In this document: positions 3,795 to 58,733 of the stretch, one piece after another
Layout of the letters: each line of letters opens with the position of its first letter
Position numbering within the stretch: the first letter of the stretch is position 1
Virus record (IMG/VR): IMGVR_UViG_3300028883_000032
Location: 1 to 64,000 of that record
Reading direction: 5' to 3' (one strand)
Length of the DNA: 64,000 nt
Position numbers and translations under genes: made by a program
The notes under the pieces: model-generated
Seen by the model: the letters and a program-made list of their open reading frames with translations, nothing else
What the model was told of the DNA's origin: nothing
Database searches by the model: none

Positions 3795-4211
3795 ATGAAA
3801 ACAGAACATTTACAGCAATTACTTGTGTCCGGACAGTTTATAGGATCTCACATGTGCCTTGCCAAAGACATAGGATCAAACGGAAATCTCTTTGGGGGTA
3901 ACATGCTAGCTTGGGCAGACGAAATGGGTGCTATTTTTGCTAAAAAGTTTACTGGAGAACCAAAGCTCGTAACTGTTCAAATGGACGCGGTTGAATTCAC
4001 TGTTCCAGTACATGAAGGCGAAATAGTTGATTTCTATGCCGCTAACCCCAAACCCGGCCATACCAGTTTAACGTTCACTCTTGTTGTTGCCAAACCGAAC
4101 AATGCCGACGGGGTAAGACAAATTGTATTTACAACGCGATTTGTTTTCGTGGCTGTCGGCGATGATGGGCACTCCAAACCAATTGAAAGGTTTGCAGAAA
4201 AGCGCCCATAG
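3795..4211 (+). CDS. acyl-CoA thioesterase (hotdog fold)
   Basis: NGNLFGGNMLAWADE motif, VTVQMDAVEF, GHTS, FVFVAV; 3' end overlaps the tRNA. Confidence 0.85.
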   Translation: MKTEHLQQLLVSGQFIGSHMCLAKDIGSNGNLFGGNMLAWADEMGAIFAKKFTGEPKLVTVQMDAVEFTVPVHEGEIVDFYAANPKPGHTSLTFTLVVAKPNNADGVRQIVFTTRFVFVAVGDDGHSKPIERFAEKRP

Positions 4212-4274
4212 TTCAGTGGTTAGAACAGCGGACTCTAAATCCGTGTGTCCTCGGTTCAAGTCCGAGTGGGCGCA
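4202..4274 (+). tRNA. amber suppressor tRNA (CUA anticodon)
   Basis: GCGCCCA/TGGGCGC acceptor, anticodon stem GCGGA/TCCGT with loop CT-CTA-AA, T-loop TTCAAGT. Confidence 0.85.
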
Positions 4275-4287
4275 CAAAGGAGACCTA

Positions 4288-8780: not shown

Positions 8781-8821
8781 GTTTTTTTGGCGGAGTGGCG
8801 GAATTGGCAGACGCGCTAGAC

Positions 8822-9358
8822 TTAACTCAAAGAATTTAGAATGTCATAAGCATTCTTTACTACATCACGAACTAGTGTTTTACCACCAGAGTAAACCCTT
8901 ACGATTGCGTTTTTTCTATTTACGTCCTTTTGAAATTTAGCGTTAGGGTAAATATCTAAGAAACCCTTAGCATCGCTTTTAGATTTTGCCAACACAACCA
9001 ATCTTATACTTTTGGCGCTATATACTTCAGTCAGCATTGAAGTTATTAAGTCTATTAAGTTTGGATCTTGGTTGCAAAATTGAAATATATTAGCTTTTTC
9101 TGTACGATACCCTTCACACAGATAAGCAATATGGCCTGCTATGCTAAGGTTAGTCTTTAATAAAGATTGATCCGGGTTTTGATGACTTACTCTGGGAAGA
9201 TAATTATATTCAGATGCACTACGCATAGAAATATTGTGAAATTTTAAATACTTACGAACTGTTTTGTGATCACATTTTAAAAGCATTCCAATTTCATAAG
9301 GATTTAATTTATCTTCTAAGTAGAGTTTTTCTAGTTCATGTTTAGTAAAATTCTTCAT
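8822..9358 (-). CDS. intron-encoded HTH + degenerate LAGLIDADG-like putative homing endonuclease
   Basis: 178 aa from MKNFTKHELEK; HTH (LYLEDKLNPYEIGMLLKCDHKTVRKYL) then IAYLCEG..FQFCNQDPNLI; antisense to the intron. Confidence 0.6.
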   Translation of the reverse strand: MKNFTKHELEKLYLEDKLNPYEIGMLLKCDHKTVRKYLKFHNISMRSASEYNYLPRVSHQNPDQSLLKTNLSIAGHIAYLCEGYRTEKANIFQFCNQDPNLIDLITSMLTEVYSAKSIRLVVLAKSKSDAKGFLDIYPNAKFQKDVNRKNAIVRVYSGGKTLVRDVVKNAYDILNSLS

Positions 9359-9626
9359 CCTGAGCCTTTGGTTAGAAATAACTAATTGAATTCGGCTATA
9401 TGCGGGAAACTCATAAAGCCTACAGTACCATACGTATACCAATAGTATACTAAATTGGAAATACGTTGTCAAGTAAAAATCTGTAGGATGTACAATTGAC
9501 AATCCGCAGGGAAGCCTGTAATGGCCCCTCAGAGACTAAACGCCGAACCCTTAACAGGTAATGCTGAAGGAGATGATATAGTCCAGACCACAACAGAATA
9601 TGGCTTGTGAAAGCAAGTGTGGTAAG
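8824..9626 (+). mobile_element. group I self-splicing intron (~803 nt) in the tRNA anticodon loop
   Basis: Core elements ATGCGGGAAACTC (P), AATCCGCAGGGAAG (Q), TCAGAGACTA (R), GATATAGTCC (S); ends in G; splice point +/-1 nt uncertain. Confidence 0.88.
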
Positions 9627-9723
9627 AGGATCTAGTGTCTTCGGACGTGTGGGTTCGAGTCCCACCTCTGCTACCATTAAGATAAACTCATATGAGACAT
9701 ATGCAAAGCGACATAAAAACAAT

Positions 9724-50569: not shown

Positions 50570-51345
50570 TACGACATCGGCCGCATGGGTCGTTAGACAT
50601 AAACCTTGAAAGAGGTGGATAGGGGCGTTGGCAACGTCCGGTCGTAGACAGTCAAAATGCAATCCGTTCCTCCTTCCTTAAAATTCCCGAGGGCAACGCT
50701 GTAGGCGAACCAACTGGAAGGACTCGAAACGAGACAACCAAAACTGGTGTGGACAAGTAACACGTGGTGGTGACTTGGAAACGTACCAACCAATTAATGG
50801 TGAATCGGACGGAAAGGTGGTGTGGTTAGATCGGCTCCTGTTAGAGTCGGTGTGGCTATCTACCATTCAAGGAATTTCTAGACCAGAAATCTAGAAAAAC
50901 TGCGAATCGGGGGACCAACAGGCCTCTGTGATGGAGTAGAGTATTTCGTTGCTCAAAAGGTAACGAAGCTCAAATCCCAGCGCTTCATCAGCCGAGAATT
51001 TTTAACAGATTCGCTCGGGTACGAGCACTTACTATCAATAAGTGAGATCATTTAAAGCACAAGACTGGGACGTGCTGAAACCTAAAGATGCCTCCGCCTT
51101 TAGTGGCCCTTAATTACTCGCAAGGTAATTAAGTTGTGTCGGAAACTAACTTTGCCCCGGCCAGGGTAAAGGGAGTGGTAAGATGCAGAAAGGTTCAGCT
51201 GGAAGACATGTGAAACCAATCTCGGGTTCACGGCATTTCCTACATACGTAAAGACATTTGCGTGGACACACCCTAAACCCAAATATTATGGGAATGTGGG
51301 GGTAAAAGTGTAGGATCAAATAGTCACGTCTAAACTATTTGATTT
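50570..51345 (+). ncRNA. large structured ncRNA, GOLLD-like candidate
   Basis: ~770 nt without a + strand ORF, many hairpins (CTCGAAACGAG, TTTCTAGA..TCTAGAAA, TTCGTTGCTCAAAAGGTAACGAA, TTAATTACTCGCAAGGTAATTAA); tRNA-rich phage context; terminal hairpin + T run. Confidence 0.6.
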
Positions 51346-54760: not shown

Positions 54761-55159
54761 ATGACAAAAACTGAATTTCGAGAATTGTGGAAAGCTGCAG
54801 AAGAAAGCGGATTAGATAGATTCACTGTTATCTACTTAAGTTCCGGAGCCAAACACAATGGGCTGCTAGGAGAAATACTATTCAAACAGAATAGTATAGG
54901 AAACTCATACCCGAGTGTATTTTTTTCAGGAACGGGGCAAAGAATTACTACCTCCCTCGACAAATTAGTTGCAACGGAACAAAATTTTATTCGAACTCCA
55001 AAGGAACTGCAACCTGGATTAGAAATCTTGGTTATGGCTAATGAAGGTTCATTAGATATTGTTAATGAATCAGAAGCAATAAAGAAATTACAAAAAGATC
55101 CCAAAACAAAAATATTTACGTGTTTAATACGAAAGCAAGTTGAATTAAGACTTGTGTAA
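54761..55159 (+). CDS. hypothetical protein
   Basis: 132 aa, AAGGA RBS. Confidence 0.6.
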   Translation: MTKTEFRELWKAAEESGLDRFTVIYLSSGAKHNGLLGEILFKQNSIGNSYPSVFFSGTGQRITTSLDKLVATEQNFIRTPKELQPGLEILVMANEGSLDIVNESEAIKKLQKDPKTKIFTCLIRKQVELRLV

Positions 55160-56093
55160 TCAAGGAGATAAAAATGCTGGGAGCTCTACGGGCCTAATGG
55201 CCCCCCACAAAGTTATTGATGTAGTACAAGAAGAGTTTTATAAAGTAAATTTAACTTTAGACAATAATTTTAGATTGTCACCCCCAGACAAAACAACAAA
55301 TTTTACAACGGCAGGAATGCAGTGGTTTAAGAACCGCTTTAATAATCCGGACGGGACAAGATGTGGTAGCAGACAATCTTGTTTACGTACAAACGATTTG
55401 TCCTTAATTGGGGACGGGACACATTTAACCTATTTTGAAATGCTGGGAAATTTTTCATTTGGAAATAACGATTATGAACAATCGGTAGAATTGTGGCACA
55501 ATATTGTTTCTCAATTAAAAATCCCAGTTACATATGTTACGGTACACCCGTCACAAAAATACCATAAGAGAGTTTGGGAGAGGTTGCATTACCCCATAAA
55601 AGAAGACGAAAGCTGCGTGTGGTCAGACGGTAATATCGGAGGATACTGTTGTGAAATGTTTGTTAATGACCTCGAAATCGGGAATCTGGTAAATACTTCT
55701 GGAGTTTCAACAGATGTGGGTTTTGGTTTTGAGAGGTTAGTACAAGTTTATGAAAACCAAACAAATATTCATGACACAACTTTGTTTGATTGCTCTTTAC
55801 CTCCTTTTGTCAGAGACCACGTTCGCGCCTTGAATGCGTTATATCTTAACGGTATAAAACCGGGAGCAAGTGGACCAAATTACTCCGCCAAACTAATACT
55901 CAGAAGAGTACTATCTCATCTTGACCCAAAATGTTATAAGTTTGGGCACTGGTTAGAACAAGAAAAACTAATTAGTGAAGATGGTAAGTACAGAGCTAAA
56001 AAACACTTTAACCGCTATGGTATTAAAGACTATGACTTTGTTAAAGCCACATTTGGTTTAACAGCCGAAGAATATGAGGAAGTACTATCGTGA
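55152..56093 (+). CDS. truncated alanyl-tRNA synthetase-like protein (catalytic core only)
   Basis: DKTTNFTTAGMQ.FK, QSCLRTNDL..IGDGTHLTYFEMLGNFSF, EIGNLV, DVGFGFERL, RDHVRA..G.KP...GPNY...LILRR. Confidence 0.85.
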   Translation: MCNQGDKNAGSSTGLMAPHKVIDVVQEEFYKVNLTLDNNFRLSPPDKTTNFTTAGMQWFKNRFNNPDGTRCGSRQSCLRTNDLSLIGDGTHLTYFEMLGNFSFGNNDYEQSVELWHNIVSQLKIPVTYVTVHPSQKYHKRVWERLHYPIKEDESCVWSDGNIGGYCCEMFVNDLEIGNLVNTSGVSTDVGFGFERLVQVYENQTNIHDTTLFDCSLPPFVRDHVRALNALYLNGIKPGASGPNYSAKLILRRVLSHLDPKCYKFGHWLEQEKLISEDGKYRAKKHFNRYGIKDYDFVKATFGLTAEEYEEVLS

Positions 56094-56691: not shown

Positions 56692-56695
56692 TATT

Positions 56696-56785
56696 GGCTG
56701 GTAGATGGGTATTCTAGATACTCTATGTTGGACACAAGCTCGGCTGATCACTGAGAAGAGCGGGTTCGACTCCCGCCACCTGCCA
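56696..56785 (+). ncRNA. tRNA-Ile(GAU)-like RNA with expanded D region
   Basis: CTCGG-CTGATCA-CTGAG anticodon arm and GCGGG-TTCGACT-CCCGC T arm; D region contains GGGTAT/ATACTC hairpin. Confidence 0.55.
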
Positions 56786-57058: not shown

Positions 57059-57132
57059 ATCCTCGTAGCTCAATTGGATAGAGCGCTGCGCTACGAACGC
57101 AGAGGTTGGGGGTTCGATCCCCTCCGAGGGTA
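57059..57132 (+). tRNA. tRNA-Arg(ACG)
   Basis: Cloverleaf, A20, loop CT-ACG-AA. Confidence 0.95.
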
Positions 57133-57225
57133 CAAACAAAAGGAGAAATTGTAGGATTTCTAGCAATTAGCTTAGCAGGAGATAAGAGCTGTAGTTATAG
57201 GGACTATTCAAACCAAACAAAAATA

Positions 57226-58138: not shown

Positions 58139-58285
58139 GGGTGATTGGCGAAATGGTACACGTCGCGGCTAACTTCCAAAAAATATTAAATCTATGGAGA
58201 AGGTAAACCGCTGGGGTATTAATTCTGTTAGATTTAAAACGGTTTTATGCAATTCCCCTTCCAAGTTCAAGTCTTGGATCGCTCT
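58139..58285 (+). ncRNA. tRNA-like RNA with enlarged anticodon and variable arms
   Basis: GGGTGAT/ATCGCTC acceptor, D loop AAATGGTA, GCGG/CCGC stem with ~38-nt insert, GGGG/CCCC long arm, CCAAG-TTCAAGT-CTTGG T arm. Confidence 0.7.
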
Positions 58286-58290
58286 GTATT

Positions 58291-58363
58291 GGGCCGGTAG
58301 CTCAGTTGGCAGAGCAGCGGACTTTTAATCCGAAGATCGACGGTTCGATCCCGTCTCGGCTCA
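58291..58363 (+). tRNA. tRNA-Lys(UUU)
   Basis: Cloverleaf, loop CT-TTT-AA. Confidence 0.93.
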
Positions 58364-58638
58364 CGAAATAGTGGAAATTGTATAATATGGCAAAATATGA
58401 CAAAGTAAATTTAGAAGAATACTTAAGAGCTGACGCTGATGGTATGCCTATATTTAGAAGATGCTTCGATCATGAAATTTTAATGTCCTTCATTAATGAT
58501 TTGGGAGCAGAGGCATTTGATAGCTGGTGGTATGAGGAAGGGGCTGAATTATTTAATAATTGGCTTAAGGACCACCCAGATTTTCATACCGAATACTGTA
58601 AACCTTTTTATAAGTAACACAGGAGAAGTTTTCCGATA

Positions 58639-58711
58639 GCCCGTATAGCTCAGCTGGCAGAGCAGCCGGCTCTTAACCGGCAGGCCCTAGGTTCGAAACC
58701 TAGTACGGGCA
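58639..58711 (+). tRNA. tRNA-Lys(CUU)
   Basis: Cloverleaf, loop CT-CTT-AA. Confidence 0.93.
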
Positions 58712-58733
58712 CTGCCAACGACAAGGAGACACC

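What the first reader, a model, noticed from the sequence alone, without database searches (positions are those of the whole stretch)
58139..58285. Giant tRNA-like RNA whose two inserted arms are complementary (kissing loops)
Seen: a 147-nt tRNA frame with intact acceptor, D and T arms. The anticodon arm carries an insert with TTAAATCTA (58186-58194) and the enlarged variable arm carries TAGATTTAA (58229-58237), its exact 9-nt reverse complement. Complementarity between two separate insertions argues against random decay, though both are AT-rich. Inference: a new tRNA-scaffolded pseudoknotted ncRNA.
Basis: partly seen in the sequence, partly recalled or inferred. Interest (0 to 1): 0.75.

Follow-up and report, generated by a model that had tools for sequence, protein, structure and literature searches.

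The report
Oversized tRNA-shaped gene in phage
A 147-base gene in a 207-kb phage's tRNA array keeps the outer shape of a leucine-type tRNA but has no anticodon loop and two long extra arms; the tRNA frame is real, but the proposed arm-to-arm pairing is only weakly above chance, and no relative was found to test it.

Summary
Window 58139-58285 (+) has a 7-bp acceptor stem, a D arm, a consensus T arm, two 4-bp G-C stems that close a 39-nt anticodon-side insert and a 38-nt variable-arm insert, and exact 9-nt complementary loops. The frame is not chance: a strict scan gives 1 real hit and 0 in 30 shuffled genomes. Its D arm is the tRNA-Leu type. It lies 5 nt upstream of tRNA-Lys(UUU) in a 206,856-bp marine-sediment phage that carries a real tmRNA and a CCA-adding-enzyme-like ORF.

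It is not a canonical tRNA. Rfam's tRNA model and default ARAGORN do not call it, and no single excision restores a good anticodon arm. The loop complementarity is suggestive only (p about 0.015-0.04). Covariation cannot be tested, because no homologue turned up in the phage, viral, metagenome or genome collections. Other oversized tRNA-Leu-type frames exist in phages and bacteria but lack the complementarity.

Best reading (0.45): a non-decoding tRNA mimic that is processed together with the array, in the manner of T4 species 1 RNA. Main rival (0.35): a decaying tRNA-Leu-type gene with the stub of a lost group I intron. I rate it a new variant of a known kind, of moderate interest.

The parts
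58139..58285 (+). Whole 147-nt tRNA-shaped gene (class II, tRNA-Leu-type frame), non-decoding
   Evidence: Sequence. MFE cloverleaf. Pair probabilities. ARAGORN calls it only with -i. Rfam tRNA does not hit it at E<=10. Unique hit of the strict frame scan, 0 of 30 shuffles.
58139..58145 (+). Acceptor stem, 5' strand (GGGUGAU). It pairs with 58278-58284 (AUCGCUC): 7 bp including G2.U71 and U4.G69. U at 58285 is the discriminator, and no CCA is encoded.
58147..58164 (+). D arm (UGGCGAAAUGGUA...) with GG in the loop and U8 just upstream. The 13-mer is tRNA-Leu-type.
   Evidence: In fetched loci the same 13-mer lies in tRNA-Leu in 14 of 15 canonical ARAGORN calls.
58165..58211 (+). Extended anticodon-side arm. 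The GCGG:CCGC base (58165-68 / 58208-11) encloses a 39-nt insert (58169-58207) with an internal loop, a bulge and a 16-nt A/U-rich terminal loop. There is no 7-nt anticodon loop.
   Evidence: The ARAGORN -i alternative (Gly-UCC with a 66-nt 'intron') has only 3 of 5 anticodon-stem pairs.
58186..58194 (+). 9-mer TTAAATCTA in the terminal loop of the anticodon-side arm
58213..58258 (+). Extended variable arm. The GGGG:CCCC base (58213-16 / 58255-58) encloses a 38-nt insert that ends in an 8-nt loop.
58229..58237 (+). 9-mer TAGATTTAA, the exact reverse complement of 58186-58194. It fills the variable-arm terminal loop.
   Evidence: Duplex energy -6.6 kcal/mol.
58261..58277 (+). T arm: CCAAG / UUCAAGU / CUUGG, with the consensus T loop and the G53-C61 pair
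58291..58364 (+). tRNA-Lys(UUU), 5 nt downstream on the same strand; likely the co-transcribed partner
   Evidence: 65 bits.
57059..57133 (+). tRNA-Arg(ACG), the nearest upstream tRNA of the same array
58639..58712 (+). tRNA-Lys(CUU), the next member of the array

Best explanation
The element descends from a class II (tRNA-Leu-type) tRNA gene and no longer decodes. It keeps the acceptor stem, D arm and T arm, which together form the part that tRNA-processing enzymes recognise. The anticodon loop has been replaced by a 39-nt irregular helix, and the variable arm has grown to 46 nt.

Inferred steps:
- It is transcribed with the neighbouring tRNA-Lys(UUU).
- RNase P cuts its 5' end, the 3' end is trimmed, and CCA is added; the phage has its own CCA-adding-enzyme-like ORF.
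- It then persists as a stable tRNA mimic, like T4 species 1 RNA.
- The two extended arms leave the junction one nucleotide apart and are of similar length, so they can lie side by side and be clamped by a 9-bp loop-loop helix.

Its most plausible role, which is speculative, is to bind proteins that recognise tRNA shape without being usable in translation or cleavable in an anticodon loop. Host tRNA-targeting defence nucleases are one example of such proteins.

Shown here: the tRNA frame, its Leu-type origin, its place in the array, the lack of an anticodon loop, and the loop complementarity. Inferred, not shown: expression, processing, stability, kissing and function.
For: Frame integrity and uniqueness. 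Leu-type D arm. A covariance model built from this sequence alone retrieves bona fide tRNA-Leu genes and other oversized Leu-type frames, though in loci preselected by a pattern that included the D-arm 13-mer. The 5-nt spacing to tRNA-Lys on the same strand is typical of the tandem tRNAs in this genome. The phage encodes a PolyA_pol/CCA-adding-type ORF at G000:135811-136191. Both inserts are closed by four consecutive G-C pairs, and their terminal loops are 9-nt complementary. T4 rnaC, in T4's tRNA cluster, is 139 nt with a consensus T arm next to its 3' end and two long hairpins. A distantly related 234-kb phage (ligase 49% identical) has a different 112-nt tRNA-shaped gene without a credible anticodon arm, also 5 nt upstream of a normal tRNA. 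Oversized Leu-type frames recur in large viral contigs.
Against: No RNA data: no RNA run was listed. No homologue anywhere, so there is no evidence of purifying selection or covariation. The folding z-score is only -0.99. The inserts are AU-rich and of low complexity, and the complementarity has p of only about 0.02-0.04. A degenerate tRNA-Ser(GGA)-like relic 1.35 kb upstream shows that tRNA genes do decay in this array. The discriminator is U rather than the A of tRNA-Leu, so charging is doubtful. The decoy role has no direct support.
Confidence: 0.45

Rival explanations
1. Decaying pseudogene. A tRNA-Leu-type gene once carried a group I intron in its anticodon loop, as two other class II tRNA genes of this phage still do. 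It lost the intron core by deletion, which left short stubs and a broken anticodon arm. The variable-arm insert is a second neutral insertion, and the 9-nt match is chance.
For: Two intron-bearing class II tRNA genes are in the same genome. The candidate's 5' half aligns with the gene at 8789-9676 through the splice site and about 24 nt into that intron (anchored shuffle p = 0.056). No excision restores a canonical tRNA. A degenerate tRNA-Ser-like relic lies nearby. No homologue was found. The complementarity is only marginally significant.
Against: The similarity to the intron's 3' end is not significant, and the 5' similarity is marginal. All frame helices are still perfect, unlike the nearby relic. 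Two independent inserts are each closed by four G-C pairs, have similar length and have complementary loops. The element is tightly packed between the upstream ORF or coding region and tRNA-Lys.
Confidence: 0.35
2. A functional decoding tRNA whose inserts are removed after transcription ('enigmatic introns', as proposed for Lak megaphage tRNAs). The product would be, for example, the Gly(UCC) reading of ARAGORN.
For: ARAGORN -i calls tRNA-Gly(UCC) with a CUUCCAA loop. The discriminator U73 and G1-C72 fit bacterial Gly identity (own knowledge). Many oversized tRNAs in other contigs do become perfect tRNAs once one insert is removed. Lak phages are a precedent (PMC6784885).
Against: The anticodon stem after excision has only 3 of 5 pairs, and that reading breaks the two G-C stems. 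The insert is far too small for a group I core, and Rfam finds no ribozyme. The phage has no RtcB and no tRNA-intron endonuclease, and its host is bacterial (tmRNA). A normal tRNA-Gly(UCC) already exists at G000:205415-205488. The D arm is Leu-type, not Gly-type.
Confidence: 0.1
3. The 9-mers act otherwise than in an intramolecular kiss. They could form an alternative nested long-range helix (a structural switch), or intermolecular loop-loop contacts that join copies into dimers or chains.
For: The nested alternative costs only 3.2 kcal/mol more than the MFE (-31.9 versus -35.1). Two mutually complementary loops on one molecule also permit head-to-tail association (inference).
Against: The nested helix has about 5% ensemble probability and destroys both G-C stems. 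There are no data on oligomers.
Confidence: 0.05
4. Chance: no gene at all, only a fortuitous tRNA-like pattern.
For: Rfam and default ARAGORN do not call it.
Against: Zero hits in 30 shuffled genomes versus one real hit. It sits inside a tRNA array on the array's strand, 5 nt from a tRNA.
Confidence: 0.02

Closest known systems
Bacteriophage T4 species 1 RNA (rnaC; AF158101 70908-71046) and species 2 RNA (rnaD)
   Same: A small RNA gene of about 140 nt inside a phage tRNA cluster, on the tRNA strand and next to a tRNA. It has a consensus T arm adjacent to the 3' end and long hairpins where the anticodon and variable arms would be. T4's record annotates it as a small stable RNA. Its function is still unknown (own knowledge).
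   Different: No sequence or model similarity: R1 finds nothing in the T4 region. T4 rnaC folds very stably (z = -4.6, against -1.0 here) and has no clear D arm or 7-bp acceptor stem in the MFE fold. No loop-loop complementarity has been noted for it.
Oversized tRNAs with 'enigmatic introns' in Lak megaphages (Devoto et al. 2019, PMC6784885)
   Same: tRNA genes in very large phages that are much longer than normal because of inserts of tens of nucleotides in the anticodon region. Bacterial tRNA finders miss them, and the mechanism is unknown.
   Different: In the Lak example shown (tRNA-Tyr, 93-nt insert), removing the insert leaves a clean anticodon arm. Here it does not, and there is also a second expansion in the variable arm.
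tRNA-Leu genes interrupted by group I introns (the classical cyanobacterial/plastid trnL-UAA; in this genome the gene at 8789-9676)
   Same: The same Leu-type D arm and T loop. The insert begins at about the same place in the anticodon loop. The first 24 nt or so resemble the start of the intron at 8789-9676.
   Different: The insert is 39-66 nt and has no catalytic core: Rfam Intron_gpI matches 9345-9604 but nothing at the candidate. The exons cannot be joined into a canonical anticodon arm.
Bacterial Y RNAs / YrlA (RF02553), tRNA mimics bound by Ro60 (Rsr)
   Same: A tRNA-like module plus a long helix on the anticodon side.
   Different: The candidate scores 21 bits on YrlA against a threshold of 69, and that match covers only the T arm plus part of tRNA-Lys. 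The phage has no TROVE gene. The conserved insert module of the cyanobacterial RNAs is absent here.
tmRNA
   Same: A tRNA-like acceptor and T arm with non-tRNA content in between.
   Different: The phage has its own genuine tmRNA elsewhere (111.8 bits). The candidate has a D arm, no tag reading frame and no pseudoknot series, and RF00023 does not match it.

Membership tests
Canonical tRNA (RF00005) | Acceptor stem, D arm with GG, T arm with the consensus loop | tested here: met
Canonical tRNA (RF00005) | 5-bp anticodon stem with a 7-nt loop (U33, anticodon, purine 37) | tested here: not met
   The MFE fold has a 4-bp base and then a 39-nt irregular helix. The only 7-nt-loop reading needs a 66-nt excision and has 3 of 5 stem pairs.
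Canonical tRNA (RF00005) | Score at or above the Rfam gathering threshold (29 bits), or a default ARAGORN call | tested here: not met
   No RF00005 match at E<=10 in a 421-nt search. Absent from default ARAGORN.
tRNA with a self-splicing group I intron | Group I catalytic core (P3-P9) within the insert | tested here: not met
   The insert is 39-66 nt. There is no Intron_gpI hit at the candidate, although the model finds 9345-9604 in the same window.
tRNA with a protein-spliced (bulge-helix-bulge) intron | A splicing endonuclease and ligase are available, and excision restores a canonical tRNA | tested here: not met
   PF01974 and PF01139 are absent from the phage. tmRNA implies a bacterial host. 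The arm after excision is poor. The host genome is unknown.
T4 species 1 RNA-like stable RNA | Located in a phage tRNA cluster, about 140 nt, T arm at the 3' end, long hairpins in the middle | tested here: met
   (architecture only).
T4 species 1 RNA-like stable RNA | Detectable homology to T4 rnaC | tested here: not met
   R1 finds nothing in T4 68-76 kb.
T4 species 1 RNA-like stable RNA | Accumulates as a stable processed RNA | not testable with these tools
   No RNA run was listed.
Y RNA / YrlA | Adjacent or co-resident Ro60 (TROVE) gene, and a YrlA model match | tested here: not met
   No TROVE in G000. YrlA scores 21 bits against a threshold of 69.
Kissing-loop (pseudoknotted) RNA | Two hairpin loops with Watson-Crick complementarity | tested here: met
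   Exact 9 nt, both in predicted terminal loops. p is about 0.015-0.04.
Kissing-loop (pseudoknotted) RNA | Covariation or probing evidence that the loops pair | not testable with these tools
   No homologue was found. Analogous oversized frames lack the complementarity.

The most novel reading that the evidence does not exclude
The RNA is a functional, expressed tRNA-scaffolded non-coding RNA. Two independently acquired arm expansions are locked by a 9-bp loop-loop helix (or link copies together). The result is a closed tRNA mimic that the phage uses against tRNA-recognising host factors, and it would be a previously undescribed architecture among phage tRNA-array RNAs.
Probability: 0.17. Interest if true: 0.7.

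Novelty: new variant of a known kind. Interest (0 to 1): 0.45.

Why it matters
Large phages carry tRNA arrays, and their roles in codon supply and in escape from tRNA-cleaving host defences are under active study. Non-decoding, tRNA-shaped RNAs within such arrays have been known since T4's species 1 RNA and remain unexplained. Oversized phage tRNAs with 'enigmatic introns' are also unexplained. This element is a clean example: the tRNA frame is demonstrably intact while the anticodon loop is gone, so it must be either a mimic or a fresh relic. The search it prompted also showed that oversized tRNA-Leu-type frames recur in viral contigs and bacterial genomes, and that one of them sits next to a Ro60 gene. 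If the mimic reading is right, this is a small, tractable object for asking what tRNA-shaped decoys do during infection.

Tried and rejected
Homologue searches that found nothing:
- Megablast of 57.0-59.5 kb against GenBank phages matched only a 39-nt tRNA-Lys segment.
- An exact 23-mer in IMG/VR gave nothing.
- Protein-anchored loci from the 292-aa neighbour, the ligase, the radical SAM protein and the AlaRS-like ORF gave only distant relatives (31% for the ligase locus, 49-50% for the others); those scanned had no tRNA-like element.
- In the 5.8-billion-protein search the nearest relatives are at most 53% identical for the ligase, and at most 71% over half of the 292-aa protein.
- The contigs fetched from those hits carry no match to model R1.
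- Only the source contig encodes the neighbouring protein.
- One weak R1 hit in the related phage proved to be coding sequence.
- An 18-nt similarity at G000:66669 is also inside a coding region.

Readings rejected:
- A mobile or repeated element: there are no other copies in the genome.
- A known ribozyme or RNA family: nothing in Rfam at E<=10.
- A tmRNA or Y RNA.
- A protein-spliced intron.
- The 44-aa ORF at 58194-58328, which runs into tRNA-Lys and was not called by the collection's gene caller.

Other points:
- RNA-seq evidence: none was listed.
- Similarity to the intron's 3' end is not significant.
- The other oversized frames share only the tRNA-Leu scaffold. They are analogues, not demonstrated homologues of the inserts.

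Full report
**Setting.** The window is the first 64 kb of a single-contig virus record of 206,856 bp. It came from a marine sediment metagenome. The record carries 28 ARAGORN tRNA calls and a genuine tmRNA (111.8 bits against RF00023), so the host is bacterial. It also encodes a PolyA_pol/CCA-adding-type ORF. tRNA genes are scattered over the first 66 kb, all on the + strand, and are interleaved with small ORFs.

Unconstrained folding gives a cloverleaf:
- a 7-bp acceptor stem;
- a D stem, preceded by U8, whose loop contains GG;
- a 4-bp GCGG:CCGC stem where the anticodon stem should be;
- one unpaired U;
- a 4-bp GGGG:CCCC stem where a class II variable arm begins;
- a 5-bp T stem with the loop UUCAAGU;
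- a U discriminator.

Almost all of these pairs have ensemble probabilities of 0.8-1.0. The GCGG:CCGC stem encloses 39 nt that form an irregular helix ending in a 16-nt loop. The GGGG:CCCC stem encloses 38 nt ending in an 8-nt loop. TTAAATCTA (58186-58194) and TAGATTTAA (58229-58237) sit in those two loops and are exact complements.

**How far beyond chance.**
- *The frame.* A strict scan for standard tRNA frame features, allowing total lengths of 95-400 nt, finds only this element on both strands of the genome. It finds nothing in 30 shuffled genomes.
- *The complementarity.* A 9-nt or longer exact complement between the two arms arises in 3.4% of dinucleotide shuffles, in 3.8% of whole-sequence shuffles and in 1.5% of mononucleotide shuffles. 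The duplex is all A-U apart from one G-C pair (-6.6 kcal/mol). The match is suggestive, not compelling.

**What it is not.**
- *Not a canonical tRNA.* Rfam's tRNA model does not match it even at E<=10, and default ARAGORN does not call it.
- *Not rescued by the ARAGORN -i reading.* With introns allowed, ARAGORN calls tRNA-Gly(UCC) with a 66-nt intron. That reading has only 3 of 5 anticodon-stem pairs and ignores both G-C stems. A normal tRNA-Gly(UCC) exists elsewhere in the genome.
- *Not a group I intron or another known ribozyme.* The inserts are too small, and no Rfam family matches.
- *Not likely a protein-spliced intron.* The phage has neither RtcB nor a tRNA-intron endonuclease.
- *Not a tmRNA or Y RNA.* There is no Ro/TROVE gene in the phage, and YrlA scores only 21 bits.
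- *Not a repeated element*.

**Where it comes from.** The D arm (UGGCGAAAUGGUA) and the T loop are of the tRNA-Leu type. Among loci fetched with a pattern containing that 13-mer, the canonical tRNA carrying it is tRNA-Leu in 14 of 15 cases. The layout is also that of a class II tRNA: a 3-4-bp D stem and a variable stem that starts one nucleotide after the anticodon stem.

Two other class II tRNA genes of this phage carry group I introns with endonuclease-sized inserts:
- 8789-9676 (Rfam Intron_gpI at 9345-9604);
- G000:64043-64799, tRNA-Ser(UGA).

Reading the exons of the first gene gives CUAGA-CUU | intron | AGGA-UCUAG. That is tRNA-Leu(UAG) split between positions 34 and 35, not the 'SeC(tca)' that ARAGORN reports.

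The candidate's 5' half aligns with that gene through the splice site and for about 24 nt into the intron. An anchored shuffle test gives p = 0.056. The 3' end shows no significant similarity. A lost-intron origin for the anticodon-side insert is therefore possible but not shown.

**No homologue.** The phage has no close relative in any collection:
- The best ligase relative is 53% identical, and the best match to the upstream 292-aa protein is 71% over half its length.
- Only the source contig encodes the neighbouring protein.
- A covariance model built from the element (R1) finds only itself in the genome. It finds nothing credible in a 234-kb relative, in another large viral record or in 17 fetched loci.

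**Analogues.** I scanned for the Leu-type D arm followed 91-121 nt later by the T loop. The pattern selects frames of about this size.
- The JGI metagenome scan returned 28 loci: the source contig, many ordinary tandem tRNAs, and about ten frames of 132-157 nt with properly paired acceptor ends.
- The IMG/VR scan returned five loci. Four of them are such frames, in viral contigs of 30-203 kb.
- The species-genome scan returned ten loci, several of them oversized frames.

All of these other frames that I scored exceed Rfam's tRNA threshold despite their inserts. The candidate does not. They are heterogeneous:
- Some become perfect tRNAs when one insert is removed, for example a tRNA-Leu with a 74-nt insert that is conserved between a metagenome contig and a Proteobacteria MAG.
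- Some keep a normal anticodon arm and have a variable region of 62-80 nt.
- One type, from a metagenome contig and a Flavipsychrobacter MAG, shows two double compensatory changes in its extended anticodon-side helix.
- Cyanobacterial arrays (Aliterella atlantica, Richelia sinica and two metagenome contigs) carry a conserved module of about 50 nt in several different tRNA frames. In Richelia the RNA lies 189 nt upstream of a Ro60 gene, which points to Y-RNA-like tRNA mimics.

None of the five two-armed frames I tested shows inter-arm complementarity (p 0.3-0.9). The viral records carrying such frames have no TROVE gene. These are analogues on the same scaffold, not homologues of the candidate's inserts.

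The nearest phage I could fetch (234 kb, 32 tRNAs, ligase 49% identical) has its own aberrant 112-nt tRNA-shaped gene. It has a perfect acceptor stem and T arm, no credible anticodon arm, and it also lies 5 nt upstream of a normal tRNA.

**Known precedents.**
- T4's record annotates rnaC (species 1 RNA, 139 nt) and rnaD next to tRNA-Arg in its tRNA cluster. The rnaC fold has a consensus T arm near the 3' end and two long hairpins. R1 finds no similarity to it.
- Lak megaphages were reported to have oversized tRNAs with 'enigmatic introns' (PMC6784885).
- Host defences that cleave tRNA anticodon or variable loops, and phage tRNAs that counter them, are documented (for example PMC13096335). This is why a decoy role is conceivable, but nothing here tests it.

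**Verdict.** The element is a real, tRNA-Leu-derived, non-decoding tRNA-shaped gene.
- Most likely (0.45) it is processed with the array and persists as a tRNA mimic, possibly with its two arms clamped by the loop-loop helix.
- The main rival (0.35) is a recently disabled tRNA gene carrying an intron stub. A degenerate tRNA-Ser(GGA)-like relic 1.35 kb upstream shows that such decay happens in this array.
- A spliceable decoding tRNA (0.1), other uses of the 9-mers (0.05) and pure chance (0.02) are less likely.

It is a new variant of a known kind, of moderate interest. The kissing-loop idea is worth a simple probing experiment but is not established.

Noticed in passing
window 50929-51337 (+): Match to GOLLD RNA (RF02032): 126.7 bits, E = 5e-33, over the whole 416-position model. 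It is below Rfam's gathering score of 150, so the default search did not list it. It lies inside the phage's tRNA-rich region.
   Followed up: no
window 8789-9676 (+): Class II tRNA gene split by a group I intron (Rfam Intron_gpI at 9345-9604, 71 bits). ARAGORN -i labels it SeC(tca), but the exons read CUAGA-CUU | intron | AGGA-UCUAG. That is tRNA-Leu(UAG) interrupted between positions 34 and 35, the classical tRNA-Leu intron site.
   Followed up: partly
G000:C1:64043-64799 (just beyond the window): tRNA-Ser(UGA) with a 667-nt insert in the anticodon loop. The insert's 3' end closely resembles that of the intron at 8789-9676 (...GUGAAA.C..GU.G.UGGUAAG|), so the two introns are related.
   Followed up: partly
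window 56695-56784 (+): Degenerate class II tRNA-Ser(GGA)-like sequence, with mismatches in the acceptor and anticodon stems and a 4-bp T stem. ARAGORN finds it only at relaxed thresholds, and its T arm gives a partial tmRNA-model hit. It is probably a decaying tRNA gene.
   Followed up: partly
window 4202-4275 (+): Well-formed tRNA with anticodon CUA (71.8 bits), an amber-suppressor type that ARAGORN labels Pyl. Stop-to-stop frame statistics give no sign that TAG or TGA is recoded genome-wide, and TAG ends 23 long ORFs.
   Followed up: partly
window 55152-56093 (+): A 313-aa ORF that matches only the N-terminal catalytic part of class II alanyl-tRNA synthetase (PF01411, 73 bits, profile positions 28-139 of 552). 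It lies 2 kb upstream of the element. No relative was found in IMG/VR.
   Followed up: no
G000:C1:150804-151169, 135811-136191 and 162777-162851: Phage-encoded tmRNA (tag GETPVLKAA), a 561-aa ORF with a CCA-adding/poly(A) polymerase domain, and a tRNA-like gene with an 8-nt anticodon loop (anticodon 'ataa').
   Followed up: no
L011:5806-5917 (G004:C1:70305-70416, IMGVR_UViG_3300033153_007973): In a 234-kb phage distantly related to this one: a 112-nt tRNA-shaped gene (34 bits on RF00005) with a perfect acceptor stem and T arm and a variable-arm-like hairpin, but no credible anticodon arm. It lies 5 nt upstream of tRNA-Val.
   Followed up: partly
L062:6807-7951 (Aliterella atlantica), L059:4605-4745 (Richelia sinica), L034:1255-2224, L043:1546-2304: Arrays of tRNA-shaped genes of 125-177 nt. 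Different tRNA frames, most with encoded CCA, each carry a homologous module of about 50 nt (...CCUUAUUC...GAAGAAUUGAGGRUUAUCG) in the anticodon region. In Richelia the RNA is 189 nt upstream of a Ro60 (TROVE + vWA_Ro60) gene, and the arrays give weak YrlA hits of 35-40 bits. They look like unpermuted Y-RNA-like tRNA mimics.
   Followed up: partly
L033:4454-4585 and L061:3925-4057 (Flavipsychrobacter MAG): A 132-133-nt tRNA-Leu-type frame with a 10-bp extension of the anticodon stem. The two copies differ by two double compensatory changes in an inner helix (GGUGC/GCACU against GGAGU/ACUCU), so this oversized tRNA-shaped RNA is under structural selection.
   Followed up: no
L049:4479-4633 (IMGVR_UViG_3300014202_001569, provirus): A 155-nt frame that looks like one tRNA-Leu-type gene nested inside another: the D arm and T arm are duplicated. 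This recalls the Lak phage 'intron that may encode a tRNA'.
   Followed up: no
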